A stretch of DNA of 64,000 nucleotides, from contig NC_086376.1 in NCBI RefSeq assembly GCF_036588685.1, positions 62,744,001 to 62,808,000 of the forward strand. Reading direction: 5' to 3'. Positions 4,310 through 35,965 of the stretch are shown in pieces (the stretch's first letter is position 1; every line of letters begins with the position of its first letter). Origin of the DNA: Mytilus trossulus (lineage: Eukaryota). The position numbers and the translations under genes were made by a program. Below the pieces are notes generated by a model, which had not been told where the DNA came from, searched no databases, and saw nothing but the letters and a program-made list of their open reading frames with translations.

Positions 4310-4428
4310 GTGCTGGCGTAGTCGAGTGGTTACTTCGAAACTCAAATGTTTAAATCTTTCCTAAGAAATGAAATTTAACACGCGGGATCGCATCCCGTAG
4401 AAACCACTGACGCTATCTAGCATTTTTT
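4310..4428 (+). ncRNA. Vault RNA-like Pol III gene, copy 1 (subfamily I)
   Basis: GTGCTGGCGTAGTCGAGTGGTTACTTCG (A-box plus vault GGTTACTTCG signature) ... GGGATCGCATCCCG (B-box-like hairpin) ... AACCACTGACGCTATCTAGCA then T6 terminator. The 5' and 3' ends pair. Confidence 0.78.
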
Positions 4429-4491
4429 CGTGTTTTTTTTCTTGTATTTTGTTGTCGTTTAGCATGGGATCATAAATCAAATAGGTTAAAG

Positions 4492-6331
4492 CAGTCGGAA
4501 ACCCGGTTGAAATAGAACAAAAGAATCGAAGCTCTTTGTTAGAGAAGGCGATAAATGTTTACTGTATTATTTACTATAGTGACAAAAAATTAAAACGTTA
4601 ATAGAATCAAACAAAAAAAACAATTTTCTTCTCAATTACGAGGTGTTTTATTTTAAAAATACCATTTGCATAAGTTTTCAATTTATCTAGTACATAGTTA
4701 AGCAGAACAATTAGATATCAAGTCGACGATATATGGGTATCTTTCAAGTTGGATGAAGAAAATGCATAACCTCCGATTTAATTTTTTTTTACCACGGACG
4801 GAAAACATATCAATCTATTAGTTCAGTAGTTTTCGTGTCTGCACTTCCATTATATGACTCAAGAAAAAATATCAAAAAAATGAGTAACAATTGCATCGAA
4901 AAGAGAAAATAGAGTACACCTTTCTATGTTAGTGCGTGTTTGAGTTGAATATTTTGTCTTGATATCGTACAAAGTTAGAATATTTGATACATCGTCTCGC
5001 TTCAGATTCTCTCATTTTTATATATCAAAGCTACAGGTTGACTTTATAACACAAACAAATCACAGTACTAAAAGATGAAATATATGGGTCAAGTGAAATA
5101 CCTAGTCTAATGAGTCACAAAAACAGAGAAGGTGTGTTCGAATAGTTATTTTTTTACTGAAAGTACTTGACGACAGTCTTTCAAGTTGGATGATGAAAAT
5201 GCATATCTTCGAAAAATTATATTTTTTTGTATGTGATATCTAGGGTTTATAGTCTTCATACACTGAAGAAATTTAGTCTGCCCTTCCACAAAATATTTAA
5301 TTAGATTTTTTTTTAAATGTTTATGAATTTTCGGAAATTCCACCTGACAACCGATTAGACAATAGTTTTAAGTTGAATCAATGCTGAAAAAAACATTAAC
5401 TGATGCTCATTAGCTAGATGATACATTTGTCTTTTAAAATACATCTGAAATATAAGGATCGTAATGGTGCAATGTGGATAAATTTATCGGTTTCCAAGAG
5501 CAAAATTGGTAGCGCGTCATCCCTACAATGGCTTCCATTTGTACGATTGTGAAAATGAACTGGCGTAATGGGGAGATAATTTTGACGCAGTAGAATCCTG
5601 ACTGAAAGGAGATCATACAGAAAATTTCTGGAACCGCAACTGCCCAATATCCCGGGTTTAAAAACATGAAATCCTGAGGTTCTGAATTTATTATACAAAT
5701 TAAATATCTCGACATCCCGAAATTCGAAAAAAGAAATCCCGGATCCCGAAATGGTCAATCCTGAAATTTCGATCTTAAAAACACCCGCTCCAGACGTCCC
5801 GAAAGTGTATTTTCTTTTTACAGTCATATCTCAGTTTAATAATTGATCCACAGTGGCGATTGATTGATTATTCAGACCCTCTCTATTAAATAAACCCTGT
5901 GACTGCCGTGGATAGTAAACTTGAAAATTATATCAGACAAAAATTACACTTTATTCGTAGTATATGTATTTGTTTCAAAGTAAAAAGAAAAATACAAACC
6001 GGGGTTCTAATTTGACTTAAATTTCGTCCAATGACGGATAAAAGACAGAAAATACACTCTATTCGTAGTATTAATGTATGTTCAAAGTATGGCAGAAAAA
6101 CGCAAACCGGAAATCTAATCTGACTTAAAATTTCGCCCAATGACGGACACATATCCGGACGTCTTTTTTCTCGTTTTTCACCCAAAATAATTCAATCCGA
6201 ATAATCATATGAATGGATGACAAATGCGATTATGCACTGTACCCATAGGACACAGAGGCATGATGATTTATTTATTGTAGAAAGAAGAGAAGCGACACCC
6301 AAAATGAGGTCTTCTCGTTTAATAGTATAGA
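4492..6331 (-). mobile_element. Helitron-like non-autonomous element/repeat block, 5' terminus at 6331
   Basis: Minus strand begins A|TCTATACTATTAAACGAG, a typical Helitron 5' TC end at an A-T target. No CTRR 3' end found. The block is absent from B-type sub-units. Confidence 0.5.
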
Positions 6332-7460
6332 TATATTTATATATACACGACCCAACTGAAAAAAAAAACCATAACTTTTCAAACCCATAAACGTTTTATA
6401 CATGTATGTGGAAGAAACCCTTTAATATGATTCAAAAGAAGAGAAAAAAACATGTGCACTTTTCCCAACATCATAATTGCCCTGATCTTCCGCGCCTTGT
6501 TCTTTCAATTTCTTGCACTGAAGCAATTTCTTTTGGAGGCAGATAATTTGAATAAATGGTGGTGTAGCTATAGTGTGGTCGCCGCAGGTGTAGGAGGTTG
6601 CGAGTTCTATTCCAAGTTGGCTCTAATTATAGACTTAAAATGTGTGGGATTTTACTCAGCATATGGAACTTTTCACACTAAAGCAGACTGCTCGGATCAG
6701 CGTCGAGTAAAATTTAACTGCATCTGGAAAAACATGAGAAAAGATGAAATATTTCGCTACATTGAAGACCTGTTGGTGACCTTCTGTTGTTGTTTTTTTA
6801 TTTGGTCGGGTTGTTGTCTCTTTGACACATTCCCCATTTCCATTCTCAATTTCATTACTTATATGTAAATCAGTTTTGCCCTCAGAAGTTGAAAAGTGAA
6901 CATCTTATACAAAACAGCAGTTAATGTGTTGAGAGGAATGACACTGTAATGTTTTTGTCAGTATTACCAAGTACCGTTACACGTTAGATTAAGGAAAATC
7001 AGATGGAACCATACGAAAACTAGATTTAGATAATAAAGCAGACAATTTGATGATCTCGCAGTTGTTGAATATTTTACAGTTGTGGTTGAAAGGGTTATAA
7101 ACTGTTTCTGCTGTTTGGTCGGGTTGTTGTCTTTTTGTAACATTCCCCGTTTACATTCTATCGATTTTATTTTAATGATTATGAGATCAACAGTAAAAAT
7201 AACATCACGCATGTTTATAGAGGAAACGTCATTAATTAATGTGCACGAAAAAGAATACTTCTTTTAAGAATATCCATAGACCTATATGTCTCTGGTATAT
7301 TGAAGAAGAAAATTCAGGAATGAAAGCAATATTGTTTTCAAAATGTAAGGATGTGCTTTGAGTAAAGAGGGGTCATAAGTTAAACAATTCATTAAATGAG
7401 AATACACAATTTTGAGTATGTATTGTCAAATTTTACAGAACATATTATCTACCATTGCAG

Positions 7461-8222
7461 CTGTTTCCATGGTACCAGGTAATCCAGATTCTATTACTCA
7501 TGCTTTCGCAGCTGAAGAAAAGAAAGCCAAAGAACTGATGAAGAAGTATGTAGCGGATTGTAAAAAGCTTGGAGTAAGTATATTTGTGCACAAACTATAG
7601 ACTGTTGATTCGTTATTTTTCGTTGGATACCAATATTCGTGGGTTTTGTGGATACAGGTGAACCGGGAATTAAAATATTCAAATACAAATTTCTATAAGG
7701 TTGTAGCCAGACTTTGGAAGAACCACGAAATCAAATATCCACGAAAATGAAATGTTTCCGTAATCCACGAAAATTGATACCAACGAAAATAAAAGAATCC
7801 ACAGTAGTACTCAACAATATGCAGACATTTTCGGGGCAAGAAATATTTCAGAGTGGGTTATTTTATCAAATTTTCCCTCTTTTTTTAAGCGAGCACCTGC
7901 TTTTCTATTTGGCGGTGGCGTTAATCTCTCTTTATTAAACTTTCAAGTTTAGTTTCTGTCTCCTTGGTATATGTTAATAAGTATTTTTATATTAATTAAA
8001 TAACTCATTAAGATATCTATTTGACAGCTACATGATGTAGATTTAGTGAAAGTAATCGGTGAACCAGGAGATGGGATCATAAAGGCTGCTGAAGAAAAGA
8101 AAGCGGACATGATTATCACAGGCTGTCGGGGTTTAGGACAGATCAGAAGAACAATGGTCGGCAGTGTCAGCGACTATATATTACACCATTCGCATGTACC
8201 TGTCTTTGTTTGTAGACATTAA
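7461..8222 (+). pseudogene. Partial USP duplicate (exons 3-4 only: 7461-7573, 8028-8222)
   Basis: Near-identical exons with intact splice sites and one E>K change. No exon 1 or 2 between this copy and the previous one. Confidence 0.8.
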
Positions 8223-9115
8223 CACTGCTAAAACATACATTTCTTATCTCAAAATACAGGAAGATTGATATTAGGTCAATACTATTATGAAAATATGTCA
8301 TAAATGTGTTGCCAAGTAATTGGACCAAACATATATATTCTTATCGTCAGTTTTGACGATATTTATACTGATGTATTAGAGTAAGATGCCATAAATATGC
8401 TCGTTTAATAAGATATTAACTATTTCTGATTTGCAAGTTTTTAAAAATAAATACATACATTCAAATCAGTTCGTTATATTGTTAACAGAATAAATTGTTC
8501 AACATGCACTATTTGGAGTTATTTGTTTCTCCTTTTTCGTATTTCGTATATGTTCATGCAATGGTTAAAAGTTTTCTAATAGTTTAAATTAATCCGAGGA
8601 ATTATATCCAAATCAAATTCTAAGTATATGTTCTACGTTTCATAAAATCAAAAGCGTTCATCAAGTTATATGAGGTCAAGTCATATTTGATTTACAAAGT
8701 TACATAGTTATTTCTCCCAAGATAAAGCTACCAGATCTCTTATAAATGTATTTAGGAAAATTCTACCATTGTGCAGCTGATAACTGACTACCAATCTGTC
8801 ATCTTCAAGACAAAAAGCCAAGACACATTGCAAATTAAAAGAGGGCAATATTTGAAATGAAAGTCACATGACTGGCACAGTTGGTCAGTCAGAAGTCCTG
8901 ATCTACGGCTCGGTACAACCTTCAGTTGCCAAAACCTTTAAGAATACAAAAAAAAACAATTATCACAATGATCTGAGTCCACAAACACTGAACACTCAAC
9001 TTTCCGTAACTTAATTATTTTTCATTTTACCGGGTAATTACCTACGTCACAAAATCTGATACAGGTAGATTTTAAATGAACATGTATATATATTTATATT
9101 GATTTCTATTAGAAT

Positions 9116-9234
9116 GTGCTGGCGTAGTCGAGTGGTTACTTCGAAACTCAAATGTTTAAATCTTTCCAAAGAAATGAAATTTAACACGCGGGATCGCATC
9201 CCGTAGAAACCACTGACGCTATCTAGCATATTTT
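9116..9234 (+). ncRNA. Vault RNA-like Pol III gene, copy 2 (subfamily I)
   Basis: Same sequence as copy 1 apart from a loop SNP. Ends CTAGCATATTTT. Upstream dyad at 9040. Confidence 0.75.
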
Positions 9235-9316
9235 CGAGTTTTTTTTCTTGTATTTTGTTGTCGTTTAGCATGGGATCATAAATCAGACAGGTTAAAGGAG
9301 ATCATACAGCTTCCAT

Positions 9317-9723
9317 GGGAAGACGGACTCCGGAGGGAGGGTAGTGCTAGTCGACCCATGTTTTTTGTGGGTAGACGGACTCCGGAGGGGGTAGTGCTAG
9401 TCGACCCATGTTTTGTGTGGGTAGACGGACTCTGGAGGGGGATAGTGTTATTCGACCCATGTTTTGTGTGGGTAGACGGACTCTGGAGGGGGTAGTGTTA
9501 TTCGACCCATGTTTTGTGTGGGTAGACGGACTCCGGAAGGGGGTAGTGCTATTCGACCCATGTTTTGTGTGGGTAGACGGACTCCGGAGGGGGTAGTGCT
9601 ATTCGACCCATGTTTTGTGTGGGTAGACGGACTCCGGAAGGGGGGGTAGTGCTATTCGACCCATGTTGTGTGTGGGTAGACGGACTCCGGAAGGGTAGTA
9701 GTGCTATTCGACCCATGTTTTGT
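9317..9723. repeat. GC-rich ~50-bp minisatellite, 8 units (GGGTAGACGGACTCCGGAGGGGGTAGTGCTATTCGACCCATGTTTTGTGT)
   Basis: Units start at ~9317, 9369, 9419, 9470, 9520, 9571, 9621 and 9674. Confidence 0.95.
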
Positions 9724-10072
9724 TACAGGTGATTAGCTGAGATATTCAGATTGGAATTCCATCATGGCTTAGATATTTAAAAAGAGAAGAATAAGGAAAT
9801 TACCCAGAAAGAAAATACATTGTATAGTTGAAGATAAACATTTGAACTTAGTTGAAAAGGACAAAGTGATTAATAAATTACATTAAAACTAAAAGACACA
9901 TATAAACCAAACACAAACTCAAGAGTATTTTGAAAATGTGCATAGAACACCCATGACAGTAACATAAAACAAGGACGAATATCACATAAAACAAGCAAGC
10001 TTAATAAAATCTTGCATTACATGCTGTAGGCAATTAGCTGTAGCTTGCAATATTCATTTATGTGTTTTACAG

Positions 10073-12201
10073 GGTATACTGAAAATGTTCACAAATCTGG
10101 GGACAAAGTTTTGCTAACACATTGTGTTGACCACAGAAAACATCTTACGTATGGATGTAAGTATCAACACTTTTCACAAGTATAAGGGCGATATGTGTAT
10201 ATAATGACAAAGAAGATAGCTTACAAGATGTGGTAAGTGTTCATGCGCACACCTTGGACTCTCATAGGACAAAACATGTTACATATTATTGTCAGTAATA
10301 TTTTGGGACTATAAAGTGTTTTATGTATATGTATCAACTACACATATAGGATCATGCATAATGTGAGGACAATTGTGTCTTATAAATATCAGATATTTAT
10401 ATATACACGACCCAACTGAAAAAAACATAACTTTTCAAAACATTAACGTATTATACTTGTGGAAGAAATTCTCTGATATGATTCAAAAGACCAAAAAAAA
10501 TCATGTGCCCTTTTCCCAACACCATTATTGCCCTGATCTTCTGTGACTGGCGCCTTGTTCTATCAATTTCTTGCACTGAAGCAATTTACAATTTATTTTG
10601 GAGGCAGATAATTTGAACAAATGGTGGTGTAGCTATTGTGTGGTCGCCACAGGTGTAGGAGGTTGTGAGTTCTATTTCAAGTCGGCTCTAATTATAATAG
10701 ACTTAAAATGTGTTGGATTTTACTCAGCATATGGAACTTTTCACACTAAAGCAGACTGCTCGGATTAGAGTCGAGTATAATTTAACTGCATCTGGAAAAA
10801 CATGAGAAAAGATTAAATATTCTGTCTATACTTATATGTAAATTAGTTTTGCCCTCAGAAGTTTAGAAGTGTACATCTTATACAAAACAGCAGTTTATGT
10901 ATTTAGAGGGATGACAATATGTTGTTTATTGTTCATTATGACCAAGTACCGTTACACGTTAGATTAAGGAAAATCAGATGGAACCATACGAAAACTAGAT
11001 AATAAGGCAGACAATTTGATAATCTCGCAGTTGTTGGATATTTTACGGTTGTGGTTGAAATGGTTATTAGAACTATTTCTGCTGTTTGGTCGGGTTATTA
11101 TCTCTTTGGCCCATTCCCCTTTTACATTCTCGATTTTATTTTAATGATTATGATATCAACAGTAAAAATAACACCACGCATGTTAGAAGAAACGTAATTA
11201 ATTAAGGTTCACGAAAAAGAATACTTCATTTAAGAATATTCATAGACATATATGTCACTGGTGTATTGAAGAAGAAAATTCAGGAATGAAAGCAATATTG
11301 TTTTCAAAATGTAAGGATGTGCTTTGAGTTAAAATGGTCATAAGTTTAACAATTCATTAAATGACAATACACAATTTTGAGTATGTATTGTCAAATTTTA
11401 CAGAACATATTATCTACCATTGCAGCTGTTTCCATGGTTCCAGGTAATCCAGATTATATTACTCATGCTTTCGCAGCAGAAGAAAAGAAAGCCAAAGAAC
11501 TGATGGAGAAGTGTGTAGCAGATTGTAAAAAGCTTGGAGTAAGTATATTTGTGCACAAACTATAGACTGTTGATTCGTTAGTTTTCGTTGGATACCAATA
11601 TTCGTGGGTTTTGTGGACACAGGTGAACCACGAATTAAAATATTCAACGAAATACAAATTTCTATAAAGTTGTAGCCAGACTTTGGAAGAACCACGAAAT
11701 CAAATATCCACGAAAATGAAATGTTTCCGTAATCCACGAAAATTGGTACCAACGAAAATAAAAGAATCCCCAGTAGTACTCAACAATATGCAGACCTTTT
11801 CTTGGGGCAAGAAATATTTCATAGTGGGTTATTTTATCAAAGTTTCCCTCTTTTTTAAGCGAGCACCGGCTTTATCATCCTGCTTTTCTATTTGGCGGTG
11901 GCGTTAATCTCTCTTTATTAAAACTTACAAGTTTCCGTCCCCTTGGTATATTTTAATAAGTATTTTTATATTAATCAAATAATTCATTGAAATATCTATT
12001 TGACAGCTACATGATGAAGATTTAGTGAAATTAATCGGTGAACCAGGAGATGGGATCATAAAGGCTGCTGAAGAAAAGAAAGCGGACATGATTATCACAG
12101 GCTGTCGGGGTTTAGGACAAATCAGAAGAACAATGGTCGGCAGTGTCAGCGACTATATATTACACCATTCGCATGTACCTGTCTTTGTTTGTAGACATTA
12201 A
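10073..12201 (+). pseudogene. Partial USP duplicate (exons 2-4: 10073-10156, 11426-11538, 12007-12201), no ATG exon
   Basis: Splice sites and frame intact. Four amino-acid changes versus the full gene (S>Y, Y>C, V>E, V>L). Confidence 0.8.
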
Positions 12202-13117
12202 CACTGCTAAACTGAAATACATTTCTTTTCTCAAAATACAGGAAGATTGATATTAGGTCAATACTATTATGAAAATATGTCATAAATGTATTGCCAAGTA
12301 ATTGGGCTATACATATATATTCTTATCGTCAGTGTTGACGATATTTATACTAATGTATTAGAGTAAGATGCCATAAATATGCTCGTGTAATAAGATATTA
12401 ACTATTTCTGATTTGCGAGTTTTTAAAAATAAATACATACATTCAAATCAGTTCGTTATATTGTTAACAGAATAAATTGTTGAACATGCACTATTTGGAG
12501 TTATCTATTTCTCCTTTTTCGTATTTCGTATGTTCATGCAATGGTTAGTAAAGTTTTCTAATAGTTTAATCCGAGGAATTATATCCAAATCAAATTTAAA
12601 GTATATGTTCTACGTTTCACAAAATCAAAAGCGTTCATCAAGTTATATGAGATCAAGTCATATTTGATTTACAAAGTTACATAGTTATTTCTCCCAAGAT
12701 AAAGCTACCATATCTCTTATGTATTTAGAAAAAATCTACCATTGTGCAGCTGACAACTGACTACCAATCTGTCATCTTCAAGACAAAAAGCCAAGACACA
12801 TTGCAAATTAAAAGAGGGCAATATTTGAAATGAAAGTCACATGACTGGCACAGTTGGTCAGTGAAGTCCTGATCTACGGCTCGGTACAACCAAGGATTTA
12901 TATAGGTGCAACAACCTTCAGTTGCCAGCCAGAACCTTTAAAAATACAAAAATAAAATCAATTATCACAATGATCTGAGTCCACAAACACTGAACACTCA
13001 ACTTTCCGTAACTTAATTATTTTTCATTTTACCGGGTAATTACCTACGTCACAAAATCTGATACAGGTAGTTTTTAAATGTACATGTATATATATTTATA
13101 TTGATCTCGAATAGAAT

Positions 13118-13235
13118 GTGCTGGCGTAGTCGAGTGGTTACTTCGAAACTCAAATGTTTAAATCTTTCCTAAGAAATGAAATTTAACACGCGGGATCGCA
13201 TCCCGTAGAAACCACTGACGCTATCTAGCATTTTT
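13118..13235 (+). ncRNA. Vault RNA-like Pol III gene, copy 3 (subfamily I)
   Basis: Body identical to copy 1. T5 terminator. Upstream dyad at 13042. Confidence 0.78.
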
Positions 13236-13314
13236 GCACCGGCCTCTTTTCGGTGTTTTTTTTCTTGTATTTTGTTGTCGTTTTGCATGGGATCATAAAT
13301 CAAATAGGTTAAAG

Positions 13315-15155
13315 CAGTCGGAAACCCGGTTGAAATAGAACAAAAGAATCGAAGCTCTTTGTTAGAGAAGGCGATAAATGTTTACTGTATTATTTACTAT
13401 AGTGACAAAAAATTAAAACGTTAATAGAATCAAACAAAAAAAACAATTTTCTTCTCAATTACGAGGTGTTTTATTTTAAAAACACCATTTGCATAAGTTT
13501 TCAATTTATCTAGTACATAGTTAAGCAGAACAATTAGATATCAAGTCGACGATATATGGGTATCTTTCAAGTTGGATGAAGAAAATGCATAACCTCCGAT
13601 TTAATTTTTTTTTACCACGGACGGAAAACATATCAATCTATTAGTTCAGTAGTTTTCGTGTCTGCACTTCCATTATATGACTCAAGAAAAAATATCAAAA
13701 CAATGAGTAACAATTGCATCGAAAAGAGAAAATAGAGTACACCTTTCTATGTTAGTGCGTGTTTGAGTTCAATATTTTGTCTTGATATGGTACAAAGTAA
13801 GAATATTTGATACATCGTCTCGCTTCAGATTCTCTCATTTTTATATATCAAAGCTACAGGTTGACTTTATAACACAAACAAATCACAGTACTAAAAGATG
13901 AAATATATGGGTCAAGTGAAATACCTAGTCTAATGAGTCACAAAAACAGAGAAGGTGTGTTCGAATAGTTATTTTTTTACTGAAAGTACTTGACGACAGT
14001 CTTTCAAGTTGGATGATGAAAATGCATATCTTCGAAAAATTATATTTTTTTGTATTTGATATCTAGGGTTTATAGTCTTCATACACTGAAGAAATTTAGT
14101 CTGCCCTTCCACAAAATATTTAATTAGAATTTTTTTTAAATGTTTATGAATTTTCGGAAATTCCACCTGACAACCGATTAGACAATAGTTTTAAGTTGAA
14201 TCAATGCAGAAAAAAAACATTAACTGATGCTCATTAGCTAGATGATACATTTGTCTTTTAAAATACAACTGAAATATAAGGATCGTAATGGTGCAATGCG
14301 GATAAATTTATCGGTTTCCAAGAGCAAAATTGGTAGCGCGTCATCCCTACAATGGCTTCCATTTGTACGATTGTGAAAATGAACTGGCGTAATGGGGAGA
14401 TAATTTTGACGCAGTAGAATCCTAACTGAAAGGAGATCATACAGAAAATTTCTGGAATCGCCACTGCCCAATATCCCGGGTTTAAAAACATGAAATCCTG
14501 AGGTTCTGAATTTATTATACAAATTAAATATCTCGACATCCCGAAATTCGAAAAAAGAAATCCCGGATCCCGAAATGGTCAATCCTGAAATTTCGATCTT
14601 AAAAACACCCGCTCCAGACGTCCCGAACGTGTATTTTCTTTTTACAGTCATATCTCAGTTTAATAATTGATCCACAGTGGAGATTGATTGATTATTCAGA
14701 CCCTCTCTATTAAATAAACCCTGTGACTGCCGTGGATAGTAAACTTGAAAATTATATCAGACAAAAAAATACACTTTATTCGTAGTATATGTATTTGTTT
14801 CAAAGTAAAAAGAAAAATGCAAACCGGGTTCTAATTTGACTTAAATTTCGTCCAATGACGGATATAAGACAGAAAATACACTCTATTCGTAGTATTAATG
14901 TATTTTCAAAGTATGGCAGAAAAACGCAAACCGGAAATCTAATCTGACTTAAAATTTCGCCCAATGACGGAAACATATCCGGACGTCTTTTTTCTCGTTT
15001 TTCACCCAAAATAACTCAATCCGAATAATTATATGAATGGATGACAAATGCGATTATGCACTGTACCCATAGGACACAGAGGCATGATGATTAATTTATT
15101 GAAGAAAGAAGAGAAGCGACACCCAAAATGAGATCTTCTCGTTTAATAGTATAGA
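13315..15155 (-). mobile_element. Second copy of the Helitron-like block (duplicated with the segment)
   Basis: Colinear with 4492-6331, with the same TCTATACTATTAAACGAG terminus on the minus strand. Confidence 0.5.
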
Positions 15156-16285
15156 TATATTTATATATACACGACCCAACTGAAAAAAAAACATAACTTT
15201 TCAAACCCATAAACGTTTTATACATGTATGTGGAAGAAATCCTTTAATATGATTTAAAAGAAGAGAAAAAAACATGTGCACTTTTCCCAACATCATAATT
15301 GCCCTGATCTTCCGCGCCTTGTTCTTTCAATTTCTTGCACTGAAGCAATTTCTTTTGGAGGCAGATAATTTGAATAAATGGTGGTGTAGCTATAGTGTGG
15401 TCGCCGCAGGTGTAGGAGGTTGCGAGTTCTATTCCAAGTTGGCTCTAATTATAGACTTAAAATGTGTGGGATTTTACTCAGCATATGGAACTTTTCACAC
15501 TAAAGCAGACTGCTCGGATCAGCGTCGAGTAAAATTTAACTGCATCTGGAAAAACATGAGAAAAGATGAAATATTTCGCTACATTGAAGACCTGTTGGTG
15601 ACCTTCTGTTGTTGTTTTTTTTCTTTGGTCGGGTTGTTGTCTCTTTGACACATTCCCCATTTCCATTCTCAATTTTATTACTTATATGTAAATCAGTTTT
15701 GCCCTCAGAAGTTGAGAAGTGAACATCTTATACAAAACAGCAGTTAATGTGTTGAGAGGAAAGACACTGTAATGTTTTTTGTCAGTATTACCAAGTACCG
15801 TTACACGTTAGATTAAGGAAAATCAGATGGAACCATACGAAAACTAGATTTAGATAATAAAGCAGACAATTTGATGATCTCGCAGTTGTTGAATATTTTA
15901 CAGTTGTGGTTGAAAGGGTTATTAAAACTGTTTCTGCAGTTTGGTCGGGTTGTTGTCTTTTTGTAACATTCCCCGTTTACATTCTCTCGATTTTATTTTA
16001 ATGATTATGAGATCAACAGTAAAAATAACATCACGCATGTTAGAGGAAACGTCATTAATTAATGTGCACGAAAAAGAATACTTCTTTTAAGAATATCCAT
16101 AGACCTATATGTCTCTGGTATATTGAAGAAGAAAATTCAGGAATGAAAGCAATATTTTGTTTTCAAAATGTAAGGATGTGCTTTGAGTAAAGAGGGGTCA
16201 TAAGTTAAACAATTCATTAAATGAGAATACACAATTTTGAGTATGTATTGTCAAATTTTACAGAACATATTATCTACCATTGCAG

Positions 16286-17049
16286 CTGTTTCCATGGTAC
16301 CAGGTAATCCAGATTCTATTACTCATGCTTTCGCAGCTGAAGAAAAGAAAGCCAAAGAACTGATGGAGAAGTATGTAGCGGATTGTAAAAAGCTTGGAGT
16401 AAGTATATTTGTGCACAAACTATAGACTGTTGATTCGTTATTTTTCGTTGGATACCAATATTCGTGGGTTTTGTGGATACAGGTGAACCGGGAATTAAAA
16501 TATTCAACGAAATACAAATTTCTATAAGGTTGTAGCCAGACTTTGGAAGAACCACGAAATCAAATATCCACGAAAATGAAATGTTTCCGTAATCCACGAA
16601 AATTGGTACCAACGAAAATAAAAGAATCCACAGTAGTACTCAACAATATGCAGACCTTTTCGGGGCAAGAAATATTTCAGAGTGGGTTATTTTATCAAAG
16701 TTTCCCTCTTTTTAAGCGAGCACCTGCTTTTCTATTTGGCGGTGGCGTTAATCTCTCTTTATTAAACTTTCAAGTTTAGTTTCTGTCTCCTTGGTATATT
16801 TTAATAAGTATTTTTATATTAATTAAATAACTCATTAAGATATCTATTTGACAGCTACATGATGTAGATTTAGTGAAAGTAATCGGTGAACCAGGAGATG
16901 GGATCATAAAGGCTGCTGAAGAAAAGAAAGCGGACATGATTATCACAGGCTGTCGGGGTTTAGGACAGATCAGAAGAACAATGGTCGGCAGTGTCAGCGA
17001 CTATATATTACACCATTCGCATGTACCTGTCTTTGTTTGTAGACATTAA
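16286..17049 (+). pseudogene. Partial USP duplicate (exons 3-4: 16286-16398, 16855-17049)
   Basis: Encodes the same peptide as exons 3-4 of the full gene. No exons 1-2 nearby. Confidence 0.8.
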
Positions 17050-17586
17050 CACTGCTAAAATATACATTTCTATCTCAAAATAAAGGAAGATTGATATTAG
17101 GTCAAAACTATTATGAAAATATATATCATAAATGTATTGCCAAGTAATTGGGCTATACATATATATTCTTATCGTCAGTTTTGACGATATTTATACTGAT
17201 GTATTAGAGTAAAATGATATAAATATGCTCGTTTAATAAGCTATTAACTATTTCTGATTTGCAAGTTTTAAAAATAAATACATACATTAAATCAGTTCGT
17301 TATATTGTAAACAGAATAAATTGTTCAACATGCACTATTTAGAGTTATTTGCTTCAAGTTTTTCGCATTTCGTATGTGCACGCAATGGTTAGTAAAGTTT
17401 TCTAATAGTTTAATCCGAGGAATTATATCTAAATCAAATGCTTAGTATATGTTCTACGTTTCATAAAATCAAAAGCGTTCATCAAGTTATATGAGATCAG
17501 GTCATATTTGTTTTACAAAGTTATATAGTTATGTCTCCCAAGATAATAGATGTTATAGGAAGATGTGATGTGAGTGCTACCACAAG

Positions 17587-18358: not shown

Positions 18359-19008
18359 ATCACAAGGTCAGGTTTTTCTCCGGCTTTTTATTGACATATT
18401 TGCACTAGATCCATTGGAAGTTTGATGTGTACTGATTGATAATTTAGTCTTAGATGCATGATTTTATTTATTAGTTTTTTTGTCTTTTTGTTGTAAGGAT
18501 GTACAAATATCCGGCCATGCCCGCTTGTAGTATTTGCATGTTTATCCATTTGATGGGTTAAGCCATTTCAACTGATTTGTATAGTTCGTTCTTATGTTGT
18601 ACCACTGTCCCATGTAAGGGGGAGGGGTTGGGATCCCGCTAACATGTTAAACAGCGCCACATTCTGTATGTATGGGCCTGTCCCAAATCAGGAGACAGTA
18701 ATTCAGTTGTTGTCGTTTTTTTTATGTCACGGTGTTTTTCTTTTCATTTTTTGTGCATAAATAAGGCCGTTAGTTTTGTCGTCTAAACTGTTTTACATTG
18801 TCATTTCAGGGCCTTTTATAGCGGACTATGCGGATTTGTCAAGAAATAGACAATGATCATTAAAAACATTGTTATTGTACGCCAAATAAATAATGAAAGA
18901 ATTTAGTTCAATCAGGCTTGTGCAGAAAGGATTTCGACACAATTCACAAAGTCATCAACGCCAAAGTTGGTTACTGTCCTATATTGAAATCTGCTCTCAT
19001 TATTCGTT

Positions 19009-24124: not shown

Positions 24125-24129
24125 TACAT

Positions 24130-24905: not shown

Positions 24906-25355
24906 TGTCATCTTCATTGTCAGTTCTGTAGTCCAAAGTGAGCAATTCGTCAATATATTGTTCTGTCTGAGAGTTGTAACATATTTCCAATTTCCGATAT
25001 CTTGAAGTCACAATCCAACAACGATTCTAGTACATTTTTGTCGACATGGTATTTTGGTTGGCCATCCAAACAATCAGTGTTCACAGATTTCACGTTTCCA
25101 TACTTGATGCATTCCATTCGCAGTGGCATCATATGCGCTAGAATGGTAACTCCTAAATATTCCGGTTCATGTTTTGAATGCATGCTGACGAAATTTGGTG
25201 TTATTTTTTCTTCATTAAACATTTCTCGCACATGGAGCATTCCAACATTCCGAAGAACTGTTAACATTTCTGATTCTGCCATTTTCCTTTTTGTTTGATC
25301 TTAATTTTCTTAATTTCCAATGATTCTCTTAATTTCCCATGATTCCCTTCTAACA

Positions 25356-25685
25356 GCTCATCATAATAGAGAAAAAAACTCATCATTAAGAAAAACCTCA
25401 TCATAATAGAGAAAAAGCTCATCACGATAAAGAAAAAGCTCATCATAATAAAGAAAAAGCTCATCATAATAAAGAAAAAGCTCATCATAATAAAGAAAAA
25501 GCTCATTATAATAAAGAAAAAGCTCACCATAATAAAGAAAAACCTCATCATAATAGAGAAAAACCTCATCATAATAGAGAAAAACCTCATCATAATAGAG
25601 AAAAACCTCATCATAATAGAGAAAATGCTCATCATGATAGAGAAAATGCTCATCATAATAAAGAAAAACCTCATCATGATAAAGA
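25356..25685. repeat. 21-bp minisatellite (CTCATCATAATA(G/A)AGAAAAA(C/G)), ~15 units
   Basis: Direct tandem periodicity, which also explains the FFSIMMR and FLYYDE pseudo-ORFs. Confidence 0.95.
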
Positions 25686-26486
25686 ATGAAGTACAATAGG
25701 TCAATGTACGGCCTTCAACACAGAGCCTTGGCTCACACCGAACAACAAGCTATAAAGGGGCCCCAAATTACTAGCGTAAAACCATTCAAACGGAAAAAAC
25801 AACGGTCTAATCTATATAAAAAAACGAGAAACGAGAAACACATATAAATTACATAAACAAACGACAATTACTGTACATCAGATTCCTGACTTAGGACAGG
25901 TGTAACCATTTGCAGCGGGATTAAACGTTTTAATGATACCAAACCTTCTCCCTTTTTTCTGAAACAATAGCATAACATAACAACTTGGAAAAACACACGA
26001 TAAAATATCAATTGACAGGCCTAACACACGATAAAATGTCAATTGGCAGGCCTAACTCTAAAACGTAAATTAATACACTATGAACGAATAAGCTACCAGA
26101 TCTCGTATGTATTTAGGAAAATTCTACCATTGTGCAGTAAAACAACTGACTACAAATCTGTCATCTTCAAGACAAAAAGCCAAGACACCTTGCAAATTAA
26201 AAGAGAGCACTATTTGAAATGAAAGTCACATGACTGGCACAGGTGTTCAGTGAAGTCGGTACAACCAAGGATTTATATATAGGTGCAACAACCTTCAGTT
26301 GTCAGAATCTTTAAGAATACAAAAAAAAATCAATTATCACAATGATCTGAGTCCACAAAGACTGAACACTCAACTGTCCGTAACTTATTTATTTTTCATT
26401 TTACCTAATTACCTACGTCACAAAATCTTATACAGGTAGTTTTTAAATGTACATGTATATATATTTATATTGATTTCTATTAGAAT

Positions 26487-26603
26487 GTGCAGGCGTAGTC
26501 GAGTGGTTACTTCGAAACTTAATGTTTAAATCTTTCTAGCGAAATGAAATTTAACACGCGGGATCGCATCCCGTAGAAACCACTGACGCTATCTAGCATT
26601 TTT
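26487..26603 (+). ncRNA. Vault RNA-like Pol III gene, copy 4 (subfamily I)
   Basis: Same motifs. A T>A change (GTGCAGG) breaks one terminal-stem pair. T5 terminator. Upstream dyad at 26411. Confidence 0.72.
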
Positions 26604-26701
26604 GCACCGGCCTCTTTTCGGTGTGTTTTTTCTTGTATTTTGTTGTCGTTTAGCATGGGATCATAAATTAGATAGGTTAAAGGAGTTCATACAGCTTCCG
26701 T

Positions 26702-26800
26702 GGGTAGACGGACTCCGGAGGGGGTAGTGCTAGACGACCCATGTTTTGTGTGGGTAGACGGACTCCGAAGGGGGTAGTGCTAGTCGACCCATGATGTTTT
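26702..26800. repeat. Two-unit version of the 50-bp minisatellite
   Basis: Paralogous position to 9317-9723. Confidence 0.9.
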
Positions 26801-30247: not shown

Positions 30248-31378
30248 TAAAATCACTGAACAGTTACCAGGAGTTTTGCCGTATCCCTTTTGTGCTTTGC
30301 TATTTTATAACAACTTCCGTGCATATCTTGACACCGATCTGCATCATTTTATTATTAAATTGACTGTACCTCTTGTATCTTTGTTTATCTGTTACAAGTT
30401 AGGCTAGAAAATAAACCAATCAGTATCGTTAGTGTCAGTATAAATTCTCTTATTTGATGTAATAATATCTACTCTTTTATTTAAGTCACGTAATTTATTA
30501 GATTTCACCTTACACGAACGTTATTTCTTTACTTGTAACTGGATGTTTGGAAGTACATATGCGTGAATTTGGTATTGGGTTAGTTCGCACATAGAGTCCG
30601 TTGCTTGCCATGCATCAAGTTGACCATTCTGAGACGAATGTATGGCATTTAGTTATAGAAAATTTTATTTGAATCAACAGATTTTTATGCTTATTAAAGT
30701 GAGTTTTGGTTGAGTTATAGGTATTATTAAAGATTTTTTTATTTTTTTTTTAAAATACGTTGATAGCAATCATGCTAGGTTGAAGGGGGTTGCATGTATG
30801 GTAATTCAATTTACCTTTTATACATCTATGAGCATTACGCTCTTTGATTTAATTAAAGAACCCGGGTCAAAATTTGGCAATATGAAAAAGGTCTATTGTT
30901 CGTTAGGTTTCGGTAACTGTTCCCTAGCAGTTCCCTGATCGAAAAACAACTGGATTGTTTTATTTGAAATTGTGTTTTTTAGTAATACATCTTAATTGTT
31001 CGCTGGCTTATTGTTCGCTACAATTGTTTCCTAGCTTGCGTCAAATAGTAGCTGTATATAAACACTTTTCTTCAACATCGAGCATAATATTGCTTTCAAT
31101 TGACTTGTGCAAGAATCTACACACAATTTCATATTTTTAATAAAAGTGTCATAACATTACCAGCATCTTATTCTATTCACAGAAAATAACTTCAATTCAA
31201 AAGTAAACAAAAATTCAGCAATAGTTGTTTTTGTGACCAGTCAGCCATTCACCGATTTTTAGTTCACGTATTGCTTTTCCTTTTTTTTTTTAAAGCATTT
31301 AACGGGTTAATTGCCTGCGTCACGTGATTTTACACGGGTAGGTTGATATAAGTATTATATATTGACCACATAAATACT

Positions 31379-31493
31379 GTGTCGGCGCAGTCGAGTGGTT
31401 ACTTCGTAACTATTTAACAGTACAAATTTTCAAATGGATTGAGATTTAACGGGTCGAATCCCGTAGAAACCACTGACGCTTTCCAGCACTTTT
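31379..31493 (+). ncRNA. Vault RNA-like Pol III gene, copy 5 (subfamily II)
   Basis: GTGTCGGCGCAGTCGAGTGGTTACTTCG...GGGTCGAATCCCGTAGAAACCACTGACGCTTTCCAGCACTTTT. Near-canonical B box. Upstream dyad at 31313. Confidence 0.72.
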
Positions 31494-32600: not shown

Positions 32601-32700
32601 CAATCTAATTAAAAACCGATCTCTCATGCTCCCGTTTTCTGATATGCAACGCGACATATCAGAAAACGGGAGCATGAGAGATCAGTTTTTAATTAGATTG
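32601..32700. mobile_element. 100-bp palindromic miniature element (46-bp arms)
   Basis: Near-perfect inverted repeat with the same termini as 19009-19112. Degenerate 9-bp TSD GTCATGGTC/GTAATGATC. Confidence 0.75.
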
Positions 32701-33316
32701 GTAATGATCATTAGTTGTATTTCATTCCTCACTATAGTTATGGAATTTTCTCATTATTGGACGCCTTATGTTGATCTACAGATGTTAAATTCAGCGTCAG
32801 TTGGTATCTGGTGGCCGGAGTTAGCAATTATACCACAGTACGTTTTGTCGACTTTTTAGAGGAAGAATCACTCTTTTATTTTGCTCGCATCATCGGTTTT
32901 TCCACTTTATTTGTATAAATTATAGAGCTACACTCATGTCTGTGACGTAAACAAAGCAATGGGAGTTTATAGAAAAGAGGGACGAAAGATTCCAAAGGGA
33001 TAGCCAAACTCATAAATAGAAATTAATGGATAACGGCATGGCAAAAAATGAAAAAAGACAAACAGAAAAACAAAAGTACACATGACATGTAACATAGAAA
33101 ACTAAAGAATAAAAAACATAGAACATGCTCAGACAGAATAAATTCCAAAAAGAAAATATGCATTTATGTATTGTCATCACTTTATTTTTAACTTTTCACA
33201 TTTATATCCTCTGCATTAAAACAAACTACTGACTAATAAGGTTAAAAGGTCAAATTTGAATGTACACTGTACAGTTCATACTGACATGAGCATAAAACAT
33301 TAGATTTTAAAATTCC

Positions 33317-35481
33317 AACTAGAGGCGCTCACCTTGGTCTATGTGAATTCATTGTATTAAACAAAGGACGCAGATGGATTCATGACAATTTTTGTTTTGT
33401 TTTGGTGATGGTGATGTATCTGTACATCTTACTTTACTGAACATTTTTGCTGCTTACAATTATTTCTATCTATAATAAACTTGTCCCAGTAGTTTCAGTG
33501 GAAAATGTTAGTTTATATTACAAATTTTATGAATTTGTTATAAATTGACCATAAAGGACAATAACTCCTTAGGGGGTCAATTGACCATTTCAGTCATGTT
33601 GACTTATTTTTAGGTCTTACTTTGCTGTACATTATTGCTGTTTACAGTTTATCTCTATCTATAATAATATTGAAGATAATAACAAAAATTCATAAGGGTT
33701 CCGCGGAACCCAGTGTCTCGCCTACTTTTGCTGTAACTCCCAGGCTCAACAAAACTGAGGAAAACAATCAATAAAAATATTCCTCTTGATACTATCTTTT
33801 GATTGTAAGAAGCGTCTGTCCAAGTTTGGTAAAAAATTCAGTATAGTTGATGAATCGAATAAATGTTTTAAAAACTTTAACTGCAGATTGTATGTAATCT
33901 TAACTGGAAGAAAAATTAAGTCCATTTATAATAAGTAAAATACAGATACACAGGTACAAAATATTAACAAAACTTCTTTTCTAGATACTAGCTTTTGATC
34001 ATAAACAAGCTTCTGTCAAAGTTTGGTACAAATTTAAAATAGTATAAAAAAGTTATTAAATTTTTAAAAAATTTAACCACATCTAGTGAATGTGTTGTTT
34101 CCTAGCAGAAAACCTAAGTCTATTTAAAAGAAAAATACGGAAAAAATGGATATATTTTTTTACAAAATTTACTTCTAGATACTATCTTATGATCATAAAC
34201 AAGCTTCTGTCCAAGTTTGGTACAAACCCAGGATAGTTAAATAAAGTTATTAAAATTTAAAAAACTTTAACCACAGAGTGAATGTTATGTTTCCCTGCAG
34301 AAAAAACTAAGTTCATTTATAAGTACAAAACAGAGAAAAAAAATTATTTTAGCAAAATTTACTTCTGGATACTATCTTATGATCATAAACAAGCTTCTGT
34401 CCAAGTTTGGTAGAAACCCAGTATAGTTTAAGAAAGTTATTAAATTATCAAAAACTTTGAACCACAGAGTGAATATTTGTGGACGCCGCCGCCGCCGCCG
34501 ACGCCGACGACGGAATGTAGGATCGCTTAGTCTCGCTTTTTCGACTAAAGTCGAAGGCTCGACAAAAACGGAAAAATTTCCTTAAAATAACCAATTCAGG
34601 GGCAGCAACCTAACAACAGGTTGTCCGATCCATCTGAAAATTTCAGGGCAGATAGATTTTCACCTGATGAACAATTTGAAAGTGGTCTAAATGTTTTGGT
34701 TTTTGAGTTATAAGCAAAAAACTACATTTTACCCCTATGTTCTATTTTAAGCCGTGGCAGCCATCTTGGTTGGTTGGCCGGGTCACCTACACATTTTTTA
34801 AACTAGATACCCCAAAGATGATTGTGGTCAAGTTTGGATTAATTTGGCCCAGTAGTTTTAGAGGAGAAGATTTTTGTAAAAGATTACTAAGATTTACGAA
34901 AAATGGTTTAATATTGATTATAAAGGGCAATGACTCCTAAAGAGGTCAACTGACCGTCATTTTGGCCATGTTGACTTATTTGTGAATCTTACGTTGCTGA
35001 ACATTATTGCTGTTTATAGTTTATCTCTATCTAATAATAATATTCAAGATAATAACCAAAAACAGCAAAAATTCCCTAAAATTACCAATTCAGGGGCAGC
35101 AACACAACAACGGGTTGTCAGATTCATCTGAAAATTTCAGGGCATATAGATCCTTACCTGATAAACAATTTTCCCCATGTCATATTTGCTCTTAATGCTT
35201 TGGTTAATGAGTTATAAGCCAAAAACTGCATTTTACTCCTATGTTCTATTTCTAGCCATGGCGGCCATCTTGGTTGGTTGGGCGGGTCACGCCACACATT
35301 TTTTAAACTAGATACCCCAATCATGATTGTGGCCAAGTTTGGTTTAATTTGGCCCAGTAGTTTCAGAGGAGAAGATTTTTGTAAAAGTTCACGACGACCG
35401 GGACGACGACGACGACGACGGACGACGGACGCCAAGTGATGGGAAAGCTCACATGGCTCTTTGGGCCAGGTGAGTTAAAAA
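33317..35481 (+). mobile_element. HINE/DINE-1 (pearl-like) element with internal tandem repeats
   Basis: 5' GCTCACCTTGGTC motif, internal ~480-bp repeats, (GAC)n microsatellite, 3' hairpin GCTCACATGGCTC-TTT-GGGCCAGGTGAG plus A-run. Confidence 0.7.
33685..34563 (+). mobile_element. Second HINE-like element nested inside 33317-35481
   Basis: 5' palindrome GGGTTCCGCGGAACCC, ~190-bp internal repeats, (GCC/GAC)n, 3' hairpin TTCGACT-AA-AGTCGAA. Host sequence resumes afterwards. Confidence 0.65.
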
Positions 35482-35850
35482 TGAATAAAAAAAAAAATTA
35501 ATAAGTTTATAAAATGTCCACTTGTTAAAAGATAAAAAAAATGTGATAAAATTTATTTATGTCATAATTGATGATAAAAAGTTAACAATCAAACGAGGTT
35601 ACTCCAATTAGACGTTTCATTAAAATCTAAAATTCAATTACTCAAGTTGTTAATTTCTTTTTTTACATGTACTATTATTAATTCATGTAAAACATAAAAC
35701 ATTGAGGGTCATTTTAGACATTATTTATCATACAGCAACATGTTTAATTCATTACGAAAAACATTTTTCATTCAATGCGTTATCACCTGCGTCACGTGCT
35801 CTGACACAGGTAGTTTGATATAAGTATTATATATTGAACACATTTTTAAT

Positions 35851-35965
35851 GTGTTGGCGTAGTCGAGTGGTTACTTCGTAACTATTTAACAGTACAAATT
35901 TTGAAGAGATTTGAGAAATAACGGGTCGGAACCCGTAGAAACCACTGACGCTTTCCAGCACTTTT
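35851..35965 (+). ncRNA. Vault RNA-like Pol III gene, copy 6 (subfamily II)
   Basis: GTGTTGGCGTAGTCGAGTGGTTACTTCG...ACGGGTCGGAACCCGTAGAAACCACTGACGCTTTCCAGCACTTTT. Fully paired terminal stem. Upstream dyad at 35785. Confidence 0.78.

What the first reader, a model, noticed from the sequence alone, without database searches (positions are those of the whole stretch)
4310..35965. Cluster of six vault-RNA-like Pol III genes in an invertebrate (probably molluscan) genome
Seen: six same-strand ~115-119 nt copies (4310, 9116, 13118, 26487, 31379, 35851). Each has a 5' block G-T-G-Y-N-G-G-C-G-Y-AGTCGAGTGGTTACTTCG, a variable AU-rich middle, a B-box-like hairpin, a 3' block GTAGAAACCACTGACGCTWTCYAGCA and an oligo-T stop. 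The ends fold into terminal stem (GUGCUGG/CUAGCAU), internal loop, GUC/GAC, bulged G, then AGUGGUU/AACCACU. Known: human vtRNA1-1 reads GGCUGGCUUUAGCUCAGCGGUUACUUCG...GUUCGAGACCCGCGGGCGCUCUCCAGUCCUUUU, with the same GGUUACUUCG after the A box, the same GCUGG/CCAG closing stem and the same stem-loop-stem-bulge-stem panhandle; vertebrate vtRNA genes also occur in clusters. Inference: this is the vault RNA locus of this species, expanded to six copies. vtRNAs are best known from deuterostomes and trypanosomes. I cannot verify whether molluscan homologues have already been reported computationally, but ORF-based annotation would miss this locus. The GUCGAGUG/CACUGAC bulged stem also resembles the Ro60-binding stem of Y RNAs, which is relevant because TEP1 and Ro60 share a TROVE domain.
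Basis: partly seen in the sequence, partly recalled or inferred. Interest (0 to 1): 0.92.

Follow-up and report, generated by a model that had tools for sequence, protein, structure and literature searches.

The report
Vault RNA gene cluster, six copies
The six small repeats are genuine members of the vault RNA family, which standard RNA-family software recognises and which was already reported by computation in molluscs and annelids, so this is a solid but ordinary annotation.

Summary
Observation confirmed. Exactly six same-strand genes of 115-118 nt lie at 4310, 9116, 13118, 26487, 31379 and 35851. All six match Rfam Vault (RF00006) over the full model at 43.9-51.8 bits, against a cut-off of 34. 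The tRNA model scores 15 bits and Y_RNA does not match.

The 5'/3' panhandle is supported by covariation. Across 39 homologues, 97% of cells are paired, against 30-53% in slid controls, and six pairs show compensatory changes. Gene and promoter are far better conserved than the flanks.

The repeats are not a SINE. A genome-wide motif count gives 36, against 3 for the control, in about eight clusters.

This is therefore one vault RNA locus of several, not "the" locus. A seventh copy lies 5.8 kb upstream of the window.

The genome encodes MVP and a TEP1-like gene.

Lophotrochozoan vault RNAs were described in 2009, and Rfam holds Lottia and Helobdella sequences. The verdict is a new member of a known kind.

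Other first-stage notes cover the same stretch (s1-830329, s1-830410).

Two side observations: a subfamily on another chromosome carries a tRNA-Lys-like centre, and the genome has an expanded set of Ro60 paralogues.

The parts
4310..4427 (+). vault RNA gene copy 1 (subfamily A), including the T-run terminator
   Evidence: Rfam RF00006, 51.8 bits, model positions 1-99. The fold gives the panhandle, z -3.5.
9116..9233 (+). vault RNA gene copy 2 (subfamily A). It has one substitution in the centre, and its terminator reads A then T4.
   Evidence: Rfam, 49.0 bits. 113/114 identical to copy 1.
13118..13235 (+). vault RNA gene copy 3 (subfamily A). The RNA is identical to copy 1.
   Evidence: Rfam, 51.8 bits. 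114/114 identical to copy 1, while the flanks are 91-92% identical.
26487..26603 (+). vault RNA gene copy 4 (subfamily A variant). It has one A-A mismatch in the closing stem and the lowest score of the six.
   Evidence: Rfam, 43.9 bits. 16/17 panhandle pairs. Fold z -1.65.
31379..31493 (+). vault RNA gene copy 5 (subfamily B, with a different central domain)
   Evidence: Rfam, 47.6 bits. 16/17 panhandle pairs.
35851..35965 (+). vault RNA gene copy 6 (subfamily B)
   Evidence: Rfam, 50.7 bits. 17/17 panhandle pairs. Fold z -3.4.
4236..4309 (+). Upstream promoter module of copy 1: CGTCA at -71 (4239-4243), ACAGGTAG at 4255-4262, and a TATA-like run at 4280-4295. The same module lies at the same offsets before copies 2-4.
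   Evidence: Read directly. Conserved columns. Offsets. The promoter is 92-99% identical among copies 1-4.
31304..31378 (+). Upstream promoter module of copy 5: CGTCA at -61, GGGTAGG, and TATA-like at -24
   Evidence: Copies 5 and 6 share only 188 bp in total, that is, the gene plus about 65 bp upstream.
35776..35850 (+). Upstream promoter module of copy 6: CGTCA at -61, ACAGGTAG (AGGTA at -43), and TATA-like at -24
2001..17546 (+). Segmental tandem duplication that carries copies 1-3. Positions 2001-8725 match 10836-17546 at 96.5% identity, and 2001-4491 match 6863-9297 at 91.5%.
   Evidence: Self-BLAST of the window.
3196..3372 (+). Exon encoding the C-terminal part of a universal stress protein (Usp) domain, about 0.9 kb upstream of copy 1 and duplicated together with it
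   Evidence: Pfam PF00582, E 2.6e-17, profile positions 87-141 of 141. It lies inside the repeated unit.

Best explanation
The window holds six paralogous vault RNA (vtRNA) genes, each a small RNA polymerase III unit.

Inferred gene layout:
- Transcription starts at the G that lies about 20-30 nt downstream of a TATA-like box.
- It is driven by a hybrid promoter. Upstream lie the TATA-like box, an ACAGGTAG element and a CRE-like CGTCA. Inside the gene lie an A box (TAGTCGAGTGG) and a degenerate B box inside a T-arm-like hairpin.
- Transcription stops at the T4-T6 run, which gives an RNA of about 111-118 nt.

The 5' and 3' ends pair into a panhandle. A covarying closing stem is followed by an internal loop and an invariant GUC(G)-GUGG / CCAC-(U)GAC helix. 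The central 45-50 nt differ between two subfamilies (copies 1-4 and copies 5-6).

By homology, the invariant panhandle is the binding platform for the TROVE domain of TEP1. TEP1 would recruit part of the RNA pool into vault particles built from MVP.

Copies 1-3 arose by recent segmental duplication together with a Usp gene fragment. Copies 5-6 are older duplicates in which only the gene and its promoter survive.

What is shown: the sequence family, the structure, its covariation, conservation above the flanks, a low clustered copy number, and the presence of MVP and TEP1-like genes. What is inferred: transcription by Pol III, the exact RNA ends, and binding to TEP1 and vaults.
For: - Family match: all six copies match Rfam Vault over model positions 1-99 at 43.9-51.8 bits, cut-off 34. 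In a permissive scan no other family is significant; tRNA scores 15.3 bits against a cut-off of 29 and Y_RNA is absent. ARAGORN finds no tRNA.
- Folding: folds give the panhandle plus a B-box hairpin.
- Covariation within this genome: 94% of cells are paired against 37-53% in slid controls.
- Covariation with 25 metagenomic homologues added: 97% against 30-53%, six pairs with changes on both sides, and 49 compensated cells against 18+-3 in shuffles.
- Other species: all nine gene copies on the eight metagenomic contigs tested also pass the Rfam Vault cut-off.
- Constraint: copies 5 and 6 are 90% identical in the gene and 79% in the promoter, while the flanks are unalignable at about 30%. Copies 1 and 3 are 100% identical in the gene against 91-92% in the flanks.
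- Promoter: a TATA-like box at -40..-15 is present in 27 of 36 family members (background 12%). AGGTA at -75..-30 is present in 15 of 36 (background 3%).
- Copy number: 11 BLAST hits, 36 motif hits against 3 control hits, and all in clusters.
- Partner proteins: MVP repeats mark two genes on C8 and one hit on C10. A gene with TROVE, DUF4062 and WD40 exons in TEP1 order lies on C4.
- Literature: TEP1's TROVE domain binds vtRNA (PMC3762200). MVP is abundant in mussel gill (PMC5302490).
Against:
- Association with vaults cannot be tested in silico.
- The B boxes of the window copies are degenerate (9-10 of 11 consensus positions).
- The window copies lack the central GTCAC motif that is shared by the C1 and C2 subfamilies and by many metagenomic homologues. 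This cluster may therefore be a lineage-specific offshoot rather than the canonical vault RNA.
- Copies 4 and 5 each have one mismatch in the closing stem.
- The TEP1 assignment rests on domain order only. TEP1_N gave no hit and the TEP1 beta-propeller model was not specific.
- The genome also has many Ro60 paralogues that could bind such RNAs.
Confidence: 0.85

Rival explanations
1. The RNAs are Y-RNA-like ligands of Ro60 rather than vault components. On this view the bulged panhandle stem is a Ro60 binding site, and the family expanded together with the Ro60 paralogues.
For: The genome carries at least eight intronless Ro60 paralogues on C9, with TROVE and vWA_Ro60 domains and E 5e-134 to solved Ro60. 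No Rfam Y_RNA was found genome-wide, although only 51 of about 189,000 candidates were scored. From memory, GCUGG...GAGUGG / CCACUG...CUAGC is loosely reminiscent of human Y3.
Against: The Rfam Y_RNA model gives no match even at E<=10 on a copy, while Vault gives 51.8 bits. The conserved GGUUACUUCG and CGCU.UC..G blocks are vault signatures in the Rfam consensus. MVP and a TEP1-like gene are present.
Confidence: 0.07
2. The copies are a tRNA-derived SINE or another dispersed Pol III retroposon family.
For: They have internal A and B boxes and a T-arm-like hairpin, there are many copies in the genome, and a LINE lies 2 kb downstream of copy 6.
Against: There are only 11 BLAST hits and 36 motif hits in 1.3 Gb, all in local clusters. 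The 3' end is an oligo-T terminator, not an A-rich or simple-repeat tail. A conserved upstream promoter travels with the gene, which retroposition would not copy. The tRNA model scores 15 bits and ARAGORN finds none. Copies 1-3 spread by kb-scale segmental duplication.
Confidence: 0.02
3. Most of the six are silent duplicates (pseudogenes) of one or two active genes, kept similar by recent duplication or gene conversion rather than by function.
For: Copies 1-3 sit in units that are 91-96% identical. Copies 4 and 5 have a closing-stem mismatch. Copy 2 has an interrupted T run. The B boxes are degenerate.
Against: Copies 5 and 6 have lost all flank similarity but keep the gene at 90% and the promoter at 79%. 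Copy 4 keeps the gene at 94% while the flanks are 45-77% identical. All six keep the TATA-like box, A box, panhandle and terminator.
Confidence: 0.06

Closest known systems
Vertebrate vault RNAs (Rfam RF00006; for example the human vtRNA1 cluster)
   Same: Length class. A box followed by GGUUAC.UCG. A B-box hairpin. A CGCU.UC..G 3' block. A panhandle with internal loop and bulge. An oligo-U end. A variable centre between paralogues. Small tandem clusters. Upstream TATA-like and CRE-like elements in addition to internal boxes (the last point for human genes is from memory: Stadler 2009, Kickhoefer). Full-length covariance-model match at 44-52 bits.
   Different: The family is much larger here: at least 36 members in about eight clusters, against four genes at two loci in human (human numbers from memory). 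The centre is AU-rich and 45-50 nt long. The B box is degenerate. There is a 9-nt extra stretch between the B-box hairpin and the 3' arm (insert in the alignment). Vault association is untested.
Lophotrochozoan vault RNAs already in Rfam and the literature (Lottia gigantea, Helobdella robusta, Macrostomum lignano; five Fasciola hepatica vtRNAs)
   Same: Box A plus TTACTTCG, panhandle and oligo-T. In Fasciola four of the five genes cluster within 133 kb and are expressed (PMC8824774). Homologues in two lophotrochozoan lineages were described in 2009 (PMC2770079).
   Different: The family described here is larger and has distinct subfamilies.
Y RNAs (Rfam RF00019) and their Ro60 complex
   Same: Pol III RNAs of about 100 nt whose paired ends carry a bulged helix bound by a TROVE-domain protein. 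Ro60 is present and expanded in this genome.
   Different: There is no Y_RNA model match. The conserved blocks are vault-type.
Bacterial YrlA-type Y RNAs (Ro60-binding stem plus a tRNA-like domain; PMC4201824, seen by title and abstract)
   Same: This applies only to the C11 subfamily outside the window, which has a terminal protein-binding stem enclosing a tRNA-like module.
   Different: The stem here is vault-type, the host is an animal, and the six window copies have no tRNA-like centre.

Membership tests
Vault RNA (Rfam RF00006) | Full-length covariance-model score at or above the curated gathering score (34 bits) | tested here: met
   43.9-51.8 bits, model positions 1-99, for all six copies.
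Vault RNA (Rfam RF00006) | Pol III gene layout: 80-150 nt, internal A and B boxes, oligo-T terminator | tested here: met
   111-114 nt up to the T run. The A box TAGTCGAGTGG is invariant. The B box matches 9-10 of 11 consensus positions inside a hairpin. T4-T6 follows the closing stem. This is sequence evidence only.
Vault RNA (Rfam RF00006) | Conserved TTACTTCG directly after box A | tested here: met
   GGTTACTTCG is present with 0 mismatches in all six copies. It is the motif used in PMC8824774 to find lophotrochozoan vtRNAs.
Vault RNA (Rfam RF00006) | Panhandle formed by the 5' and 3' ends, supported by compensatory changes | tested here: met
   97% of cells paired against 30-53% in slid controls; six pairs with changes on both sides.
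Vault RNA (Rfam RF00006) | The genome encodes the vault shell protein MVP and the vtRNA-binding protein TEP1 | tested here: met
   MVP repeat exons on C8 (two genes) and C10. TROVE, DUF4062 and WD40 exons lie in order on C4:83.35-83.38 Mb, and this TROVE domain is not Ro60-like by tblastn. TEP1 is probable, not proven.
Vault RNA (Rfam RF00006) | Transcribed as a discrete small RNA | not testable with these tools
Vault RNA (Rfam RF00006) | Physical association with vault particles through TEP1 | not testable with these tools
   This needs vault purification or TEP1 immunoprecipitation.
Y RNA (Rfam RF00019) | Covariance-model match, including the Ro60-binding helix | tested here: not met
   No Y_RNA match at E<=10 on copy 1. 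None was found genome-wide, but that was a weak test.
tRNA or tRNA-derived SINE | Cloverleaf or tRNA model match | tested here: not met
   tRNA model 15.3 bits against a cut-off of 29. ARAGORN finds 0 tRNAs in the window.
tRNA or tRNA-derived SINE | Hundreds to thousands of dispersed copies with retroposon tails | tested here: not met
   11 BLAST hits and 36 motif hits, clustered, with terminator-type 3' ends.

The most novel reading that the evidence does not exclude
The vault-type panhandle may serve in this lineage as a reusable chassis for a diversified family of TROVE-protein ligands. The family has at least 36 genes whose central domains have been swapped. One subfamily has a whole tRNA-Lys-like module in the centre, which parallels bacterial YrlA. 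The family sits in a genome that also has an expanded set of Ro60 paralogues. On this reading some subfamilies, possibly including the window's lineage-specific ones that lack the widely shared central GTCAC motif, would work with Ro60 paralogues in RNA surveillance or stress and immunity rather than in vaults.
Probability: 0.1. Interest if true: 0.65.

Novelty: new member of a known kind. Interest (0 to 1): 0.3.

Why it matters
The result gives a clean, well-supported annotation of small RNA genes that ORF-based pipelines skip. It shows that the vault RNA family in this invertebrate is unusually large and clustered, with a conserved hybrid promoter. It also supplies material for a lophotrochozoan vault RNA model: 36 paralogues and 25 metagenomic homologues with strong covariation.

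It does not change what is known about vault RNAs. Their presence in molluscs and annelids has been reported since 2009, and the standard Rfam model detects these copies. The tRNA-bearing subfamily and the parallel Ro60 expansion are the only parts that could lead somewhere new.

Tried and rejected
Names are withheld, so the phylum is not established. The only hints towards a bivalve are 32.6% GC, the 1.3 Gb genome size and a TROVE expansion like the one reported for bivalves.
- TEP1-specific Pfam models: TEP1_N gave nothing, and Beta-prop_TEP1_2nd hit generic WD40 repeats. Neither is informative.
- Y_RNA genome scan: no hit, but only 51 of about 189,000 candidates were scored. This is no evidence of absence.
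- Literature search by sequence motif: it found only an unrelated primer. Searches for vault RNA with Crassostrea, with mollusc, or with invertebrate found no paper on bivalve vtRNA genes.
- SINE, tRNA and Y-RNA readings: rejected for the reasons given under the rival explanations.
- Bacterial-type promoter and terminator scan: not meaningful for a eukaryotic Pol III gene.
- The N run at 46839-47054 was left untouched.
- Linkage to protocadherin genes, as in vertebrates, was considered but not tested.
Full report
OBSERVATION

None is expected in shuffles. The 3' block also occurs exactly six times. There are no orphan halves and no further copies in the window.

An Rfam 15 scan of the whole window at gathering thresholds returns exactly six matches, all to Vault (RF00006). 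They lie at 4310-4427, 13118-13235, 35851-35965, 9116-9233, 31379-31493 and 26487-26603. They score 51.8, 51.8, 50.7, 49.0, 47.6 and 43.9 bits against a cut-off of 34, and each covers model positions 1-99.

WHAT IT IS NOT

- A permissive Rfam scan of copy 1 (E up to 10) lists Vault at E 3.8e-11 and nothing else of note. The tRNA model reaches 15.3 bits (cut-off 29) and Y_RNA does not appear.
- ARAGORN finds no tRNA in the window.
- A 201-nt query (promoter plus gene) finds 11 places in the 1.3 Gb genome.
- The degenerate A-box/TTACTTCG motif finds 36 places, against 3 for the reversed control. All lie in local clusters.
- The 3' ends are oligo-T stops, not retroposon tails.
- A conserved upstream promoter accompanies the gene.
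- Copies 1-3 spread through kb-scale segmental duplication.

Together these points exclude a SINE.

STRUCTURE

They also give a T-arm-like hairpin over the B box. The z-scores are -3.5, -1.7, -2.5 and -3.4.

On 17 paralogues from this genome, 94.3% of pair cells are standard pairs, against 37-53% when the 3' partner is slid. Compensatory changes occur at pairs 2/126 (UA to GC) and 21/107 (UA to AU).

A scan of public metagenome contigs with the A-box motif gave 42 contigs. Among them are 25 distinct genes with the same architecture, most with a TATA-like box near -30. All nine gene copies on the eight contigs I tested pass the Rfam Vault cut-off, at 40-58 bits.

On the combined alignment of 39 sequences:
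- 97.0% of cells pair, against 30-53% in slid controls.
- Six pairs change on both sides.
- 49 cells are compensated, against 18.4+-3.0 in shuffles.
- Five of the seven closing-stem pairs covary.
- Eight of the ten pairs of the inner helix keep the same bases in 38 or 39 of the 39 sequences.

That invariance fits a sequence-specific protein site overlapping the A box.

GENE AND PROMOTER ARE UNDER CONSTRAINT

Copies 5 and 6 share only 188 bp, that is, the gene plus about 65 bp upstream. Their identity is 90% in the gene and 79% in the promoter, with unalignable flanks at about 30%. Copies 1 and 3 are identical in the gene inside a duplication whose flanks are 91-92% identical. The binomial P values are crude, because flank alignments include duplication breakpoints.

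Upstream of copies 1-4 lie CGTCA at -71, ACAGGTAG (AGGTA at -53) and a TATA-like run from about -30 to -15. In copies 5-6 the CGTCA sits at -61 and the TATA-like box at -24.

Across the 36 family members, a TATA-like box at -40..-15 occurs in 27 (background 12%). AGGTA at -75..-30 occurs in 15 (background 3%).

This is a hybrid Pol III promoter, with upstream elements plus internal A and B boxes, as reported for vertebrate vault RNA genes. That last statement is from my own knowledge of Stadler et al. 2009 and Kickhoefer et al., which I did not read here.

The first-stage note s1-830329 on the same stretch points to the spacing difference. I confirm a 10-nt offset of CGTCA between the subfamilies but did not study it further.

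GENOMIC ORGANISATION

Positions 2001-8725 match 10836-17546 at 96.5%, and 2001-4491 match 6863-9297 at 91.5%. Copy 4 shares 600-700 bp with copies 1-3.

Each unit carries an exon for the C-terminal part of a universal stress protein domain, about 0.9 kb upstream of the RNA gene (3196-3372; Pfam Usp, E 2.6e-17). This agrees with first-stage note s1-830410. "USP" there means universal stress protein.

A seventh, subfamily-B copy lies 5.8 kb before the window on the opposite strand (L003, 53.6 bits).

Genome-wide, Rfam-positive or motif-positive copies cluster as follows:
- C1: 5.65-5.69 Mb and 6.02 Mb.
- C2: 51.64-51.75 Mb, about eleven copies.
- C4: 60.04 Mb and this locus.
- C6, C9, C11, C14 and C15.

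Of the 36 copies, 30 keep at least 14 of 17 panhandle pairs and 33 keep at least 13. A few (L030, L031, L034) look decayed.

The window's cluster is thus one locus among several. The C1 subfamily has a perfect B box (GGTTCGAATCC), and the C1 and C2 subfamilies share a central GTCAC motif with many metagenomic homologues. The window copies lack both, so they may be a lineage-specific offshoot.

PARTNER PROTEINS

- Pfam Vault (MVP repeat) exons mark two genes on C8 at 33.61 and 33.65 Mb, plus a hit on C10.
- TROVE hits fall into two classes.
- The first class is at least eight intronless ORFs of about 500 aa on C9. They are Ro60 paralogues, with TROVE and vWA_Ro60 domains and E 5e-134 to solved Ro60.
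- The second class is an intron-bearing gene on C4:83.35-83.38 Mb. Its TROVE exons are not Ro60-like by tblastn. They are followed on the same strand by DUF4062 and WD40 exons, which is the domain order of TEP1.
- TEP1-specific models were uninformative.

From the literature: TEP1's TROVE domain binds vtRNA (PMC3762200). MVP is abundant in blue mussel gill (PMC5302490).

MECHANISM

The best-supported reading has three steps. Pol III transcribes each unit from the hybrid promoter to the T run. The RNA folds into the panhandle. The invariant inner helix and loop bind the TEP1 TROVE domain, which brings a fraction of the RNA into vaults.

The variable centres give paralogue-specific functions, which are unknown here as they are in vertebrates.

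What is shown: family membership by sequence and structure, covariation, constraint, copy number and partner genes. What is inferred: transcription, RNA ends and vault binding.

COMPARISON AND NOVELTY

PMC2770079 (2009) states that vault RNA homologues had been described in two lophotrochozoan lineages. PMC8824774 used the Lottia gigantea (mollusc) and Helobdella robusta entries of Rfam RF00006 to find five expressed vtRNAs in Fasciola, four of them clustered.

I found no open paper on bivalve vtRNA genes. Even so, the standard Rfam model detects these copies well above threshold. The finding is a new member of a known kind.

The unusual aspects are the family size and the side observations below.

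LIMITS

Hints towards a bivalve are 32.6% GC, the 1.3 Gb genome size and a TROVE expansion like that reported for bivalves in PMC8382680 (9.2 against 1.9 genes).
- Genome-wide counts are lower bounds, because only the best candidates are scored.
- The N run at 46839-47054 was not touched.

Noticed in passing
L036:242-386, L037:242-386, L038:242-386 (G000 C11:61.10-61.13 Mb): Three tandem genes about 11 kb apart have vault-type ends (14-15 of 17 panhandle pairs) and a T5 stop. Their whole central domain is a tRNA-like sequence: Rfam tRNA 33-37 bits, and ARAGORN calls tRNA-Lys(ttt) in L036, with a 9-nt anticodon loop. Two of the three have no upstream TATA-like box; L038 has one match at -18. 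The layout of a stem plus a tRNA-like module recalls bacterial YrlA Y RNAs.
   Followed up: partly
L022-L025 and further hits on G000 C9 (13.8, 15.5, 25.5, 33.8, 38.1 Mb): At least eight intronless ORFs of about 475-540 aa are Ro60 paralogues, with TROVE and vWA_Ro60 domains and E 5e-134 to solved Ro60. A TROVE orthogroup expansion in bivalves has been published (PMC8382680). No Rfam Y RNA was detected, but that was a weak test.
   Followed up: partly
G000 C4:83350000-83383000, minus strand (L044, L046, L047): A probable TEP1 orthologue, with TROVE exons, then DUF4062, then WD40 repeats. It lies 20.6 Mb from the RNA cluster on the same chromosome.
   Followed up: partly
L003:1501-1601 (-), G000 C4:62738150-62738250: A seventh member of this cluster lies 5.8 kb before the window on the opposite strand. 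It belongs to subfamily B, has a 14-nt shorter centre and scores 53.6 bits.
   Followed up: yes
window 38083-42657 (+): A non-LTR retrotransposon with two long open frames. ORF1 is a coiled-coil protein of 364 aa. ORF2 is 1142 aa with an endonuclease and a reverse transcriptase domain. It lies 2 kb downstream of copy 6.
   Followed up: partly
window 56152-56565 (-): An open frame encoding an immunoglobulin (I-set / Ig_3) domain, probably an exon of a neighbouring gene.
   Followed up: no
L049-L090 (metagenome contigs): Twenty-five distinct vault RNA genes from unnamed organisms, most with a TATA-like box near -30. Many share a central motif close to CYGTCACTTCR, which the C1 and C2 subfamilies of this genome also carry and the window copies lack. 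L064 (33% GC) is close to this genome's C2/C6/C15 subfamily. L050 and L062 share even the central domain with the C1 subfamily.
   Followed up: partly
L004 (G000 C1:6021576-6021688): A copy whose L001-type promoter is pushed about 66 nt away from the gene by an insertion. It also has an A-C mismatch in the closing stem, so it is a likely pseudogene.
   Followed up: no
window 9316-9723 and 25352-25686: Two tandem arrays, with periods of about 51 bp and about 21 bp. The first starts just downstream of copy 2 and the second lies upstream of copy 4.
   Followed up: no
L041-L043 (G000 C9:49.95-49.96 Mb): A divergent subfamily with GAGG/CCUC in place of GUGG/CCAC in the inner helix (a compensatory flip of pair 18). 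It has no clear B box and falls below Rfam's reporting level.
   Followed up: no
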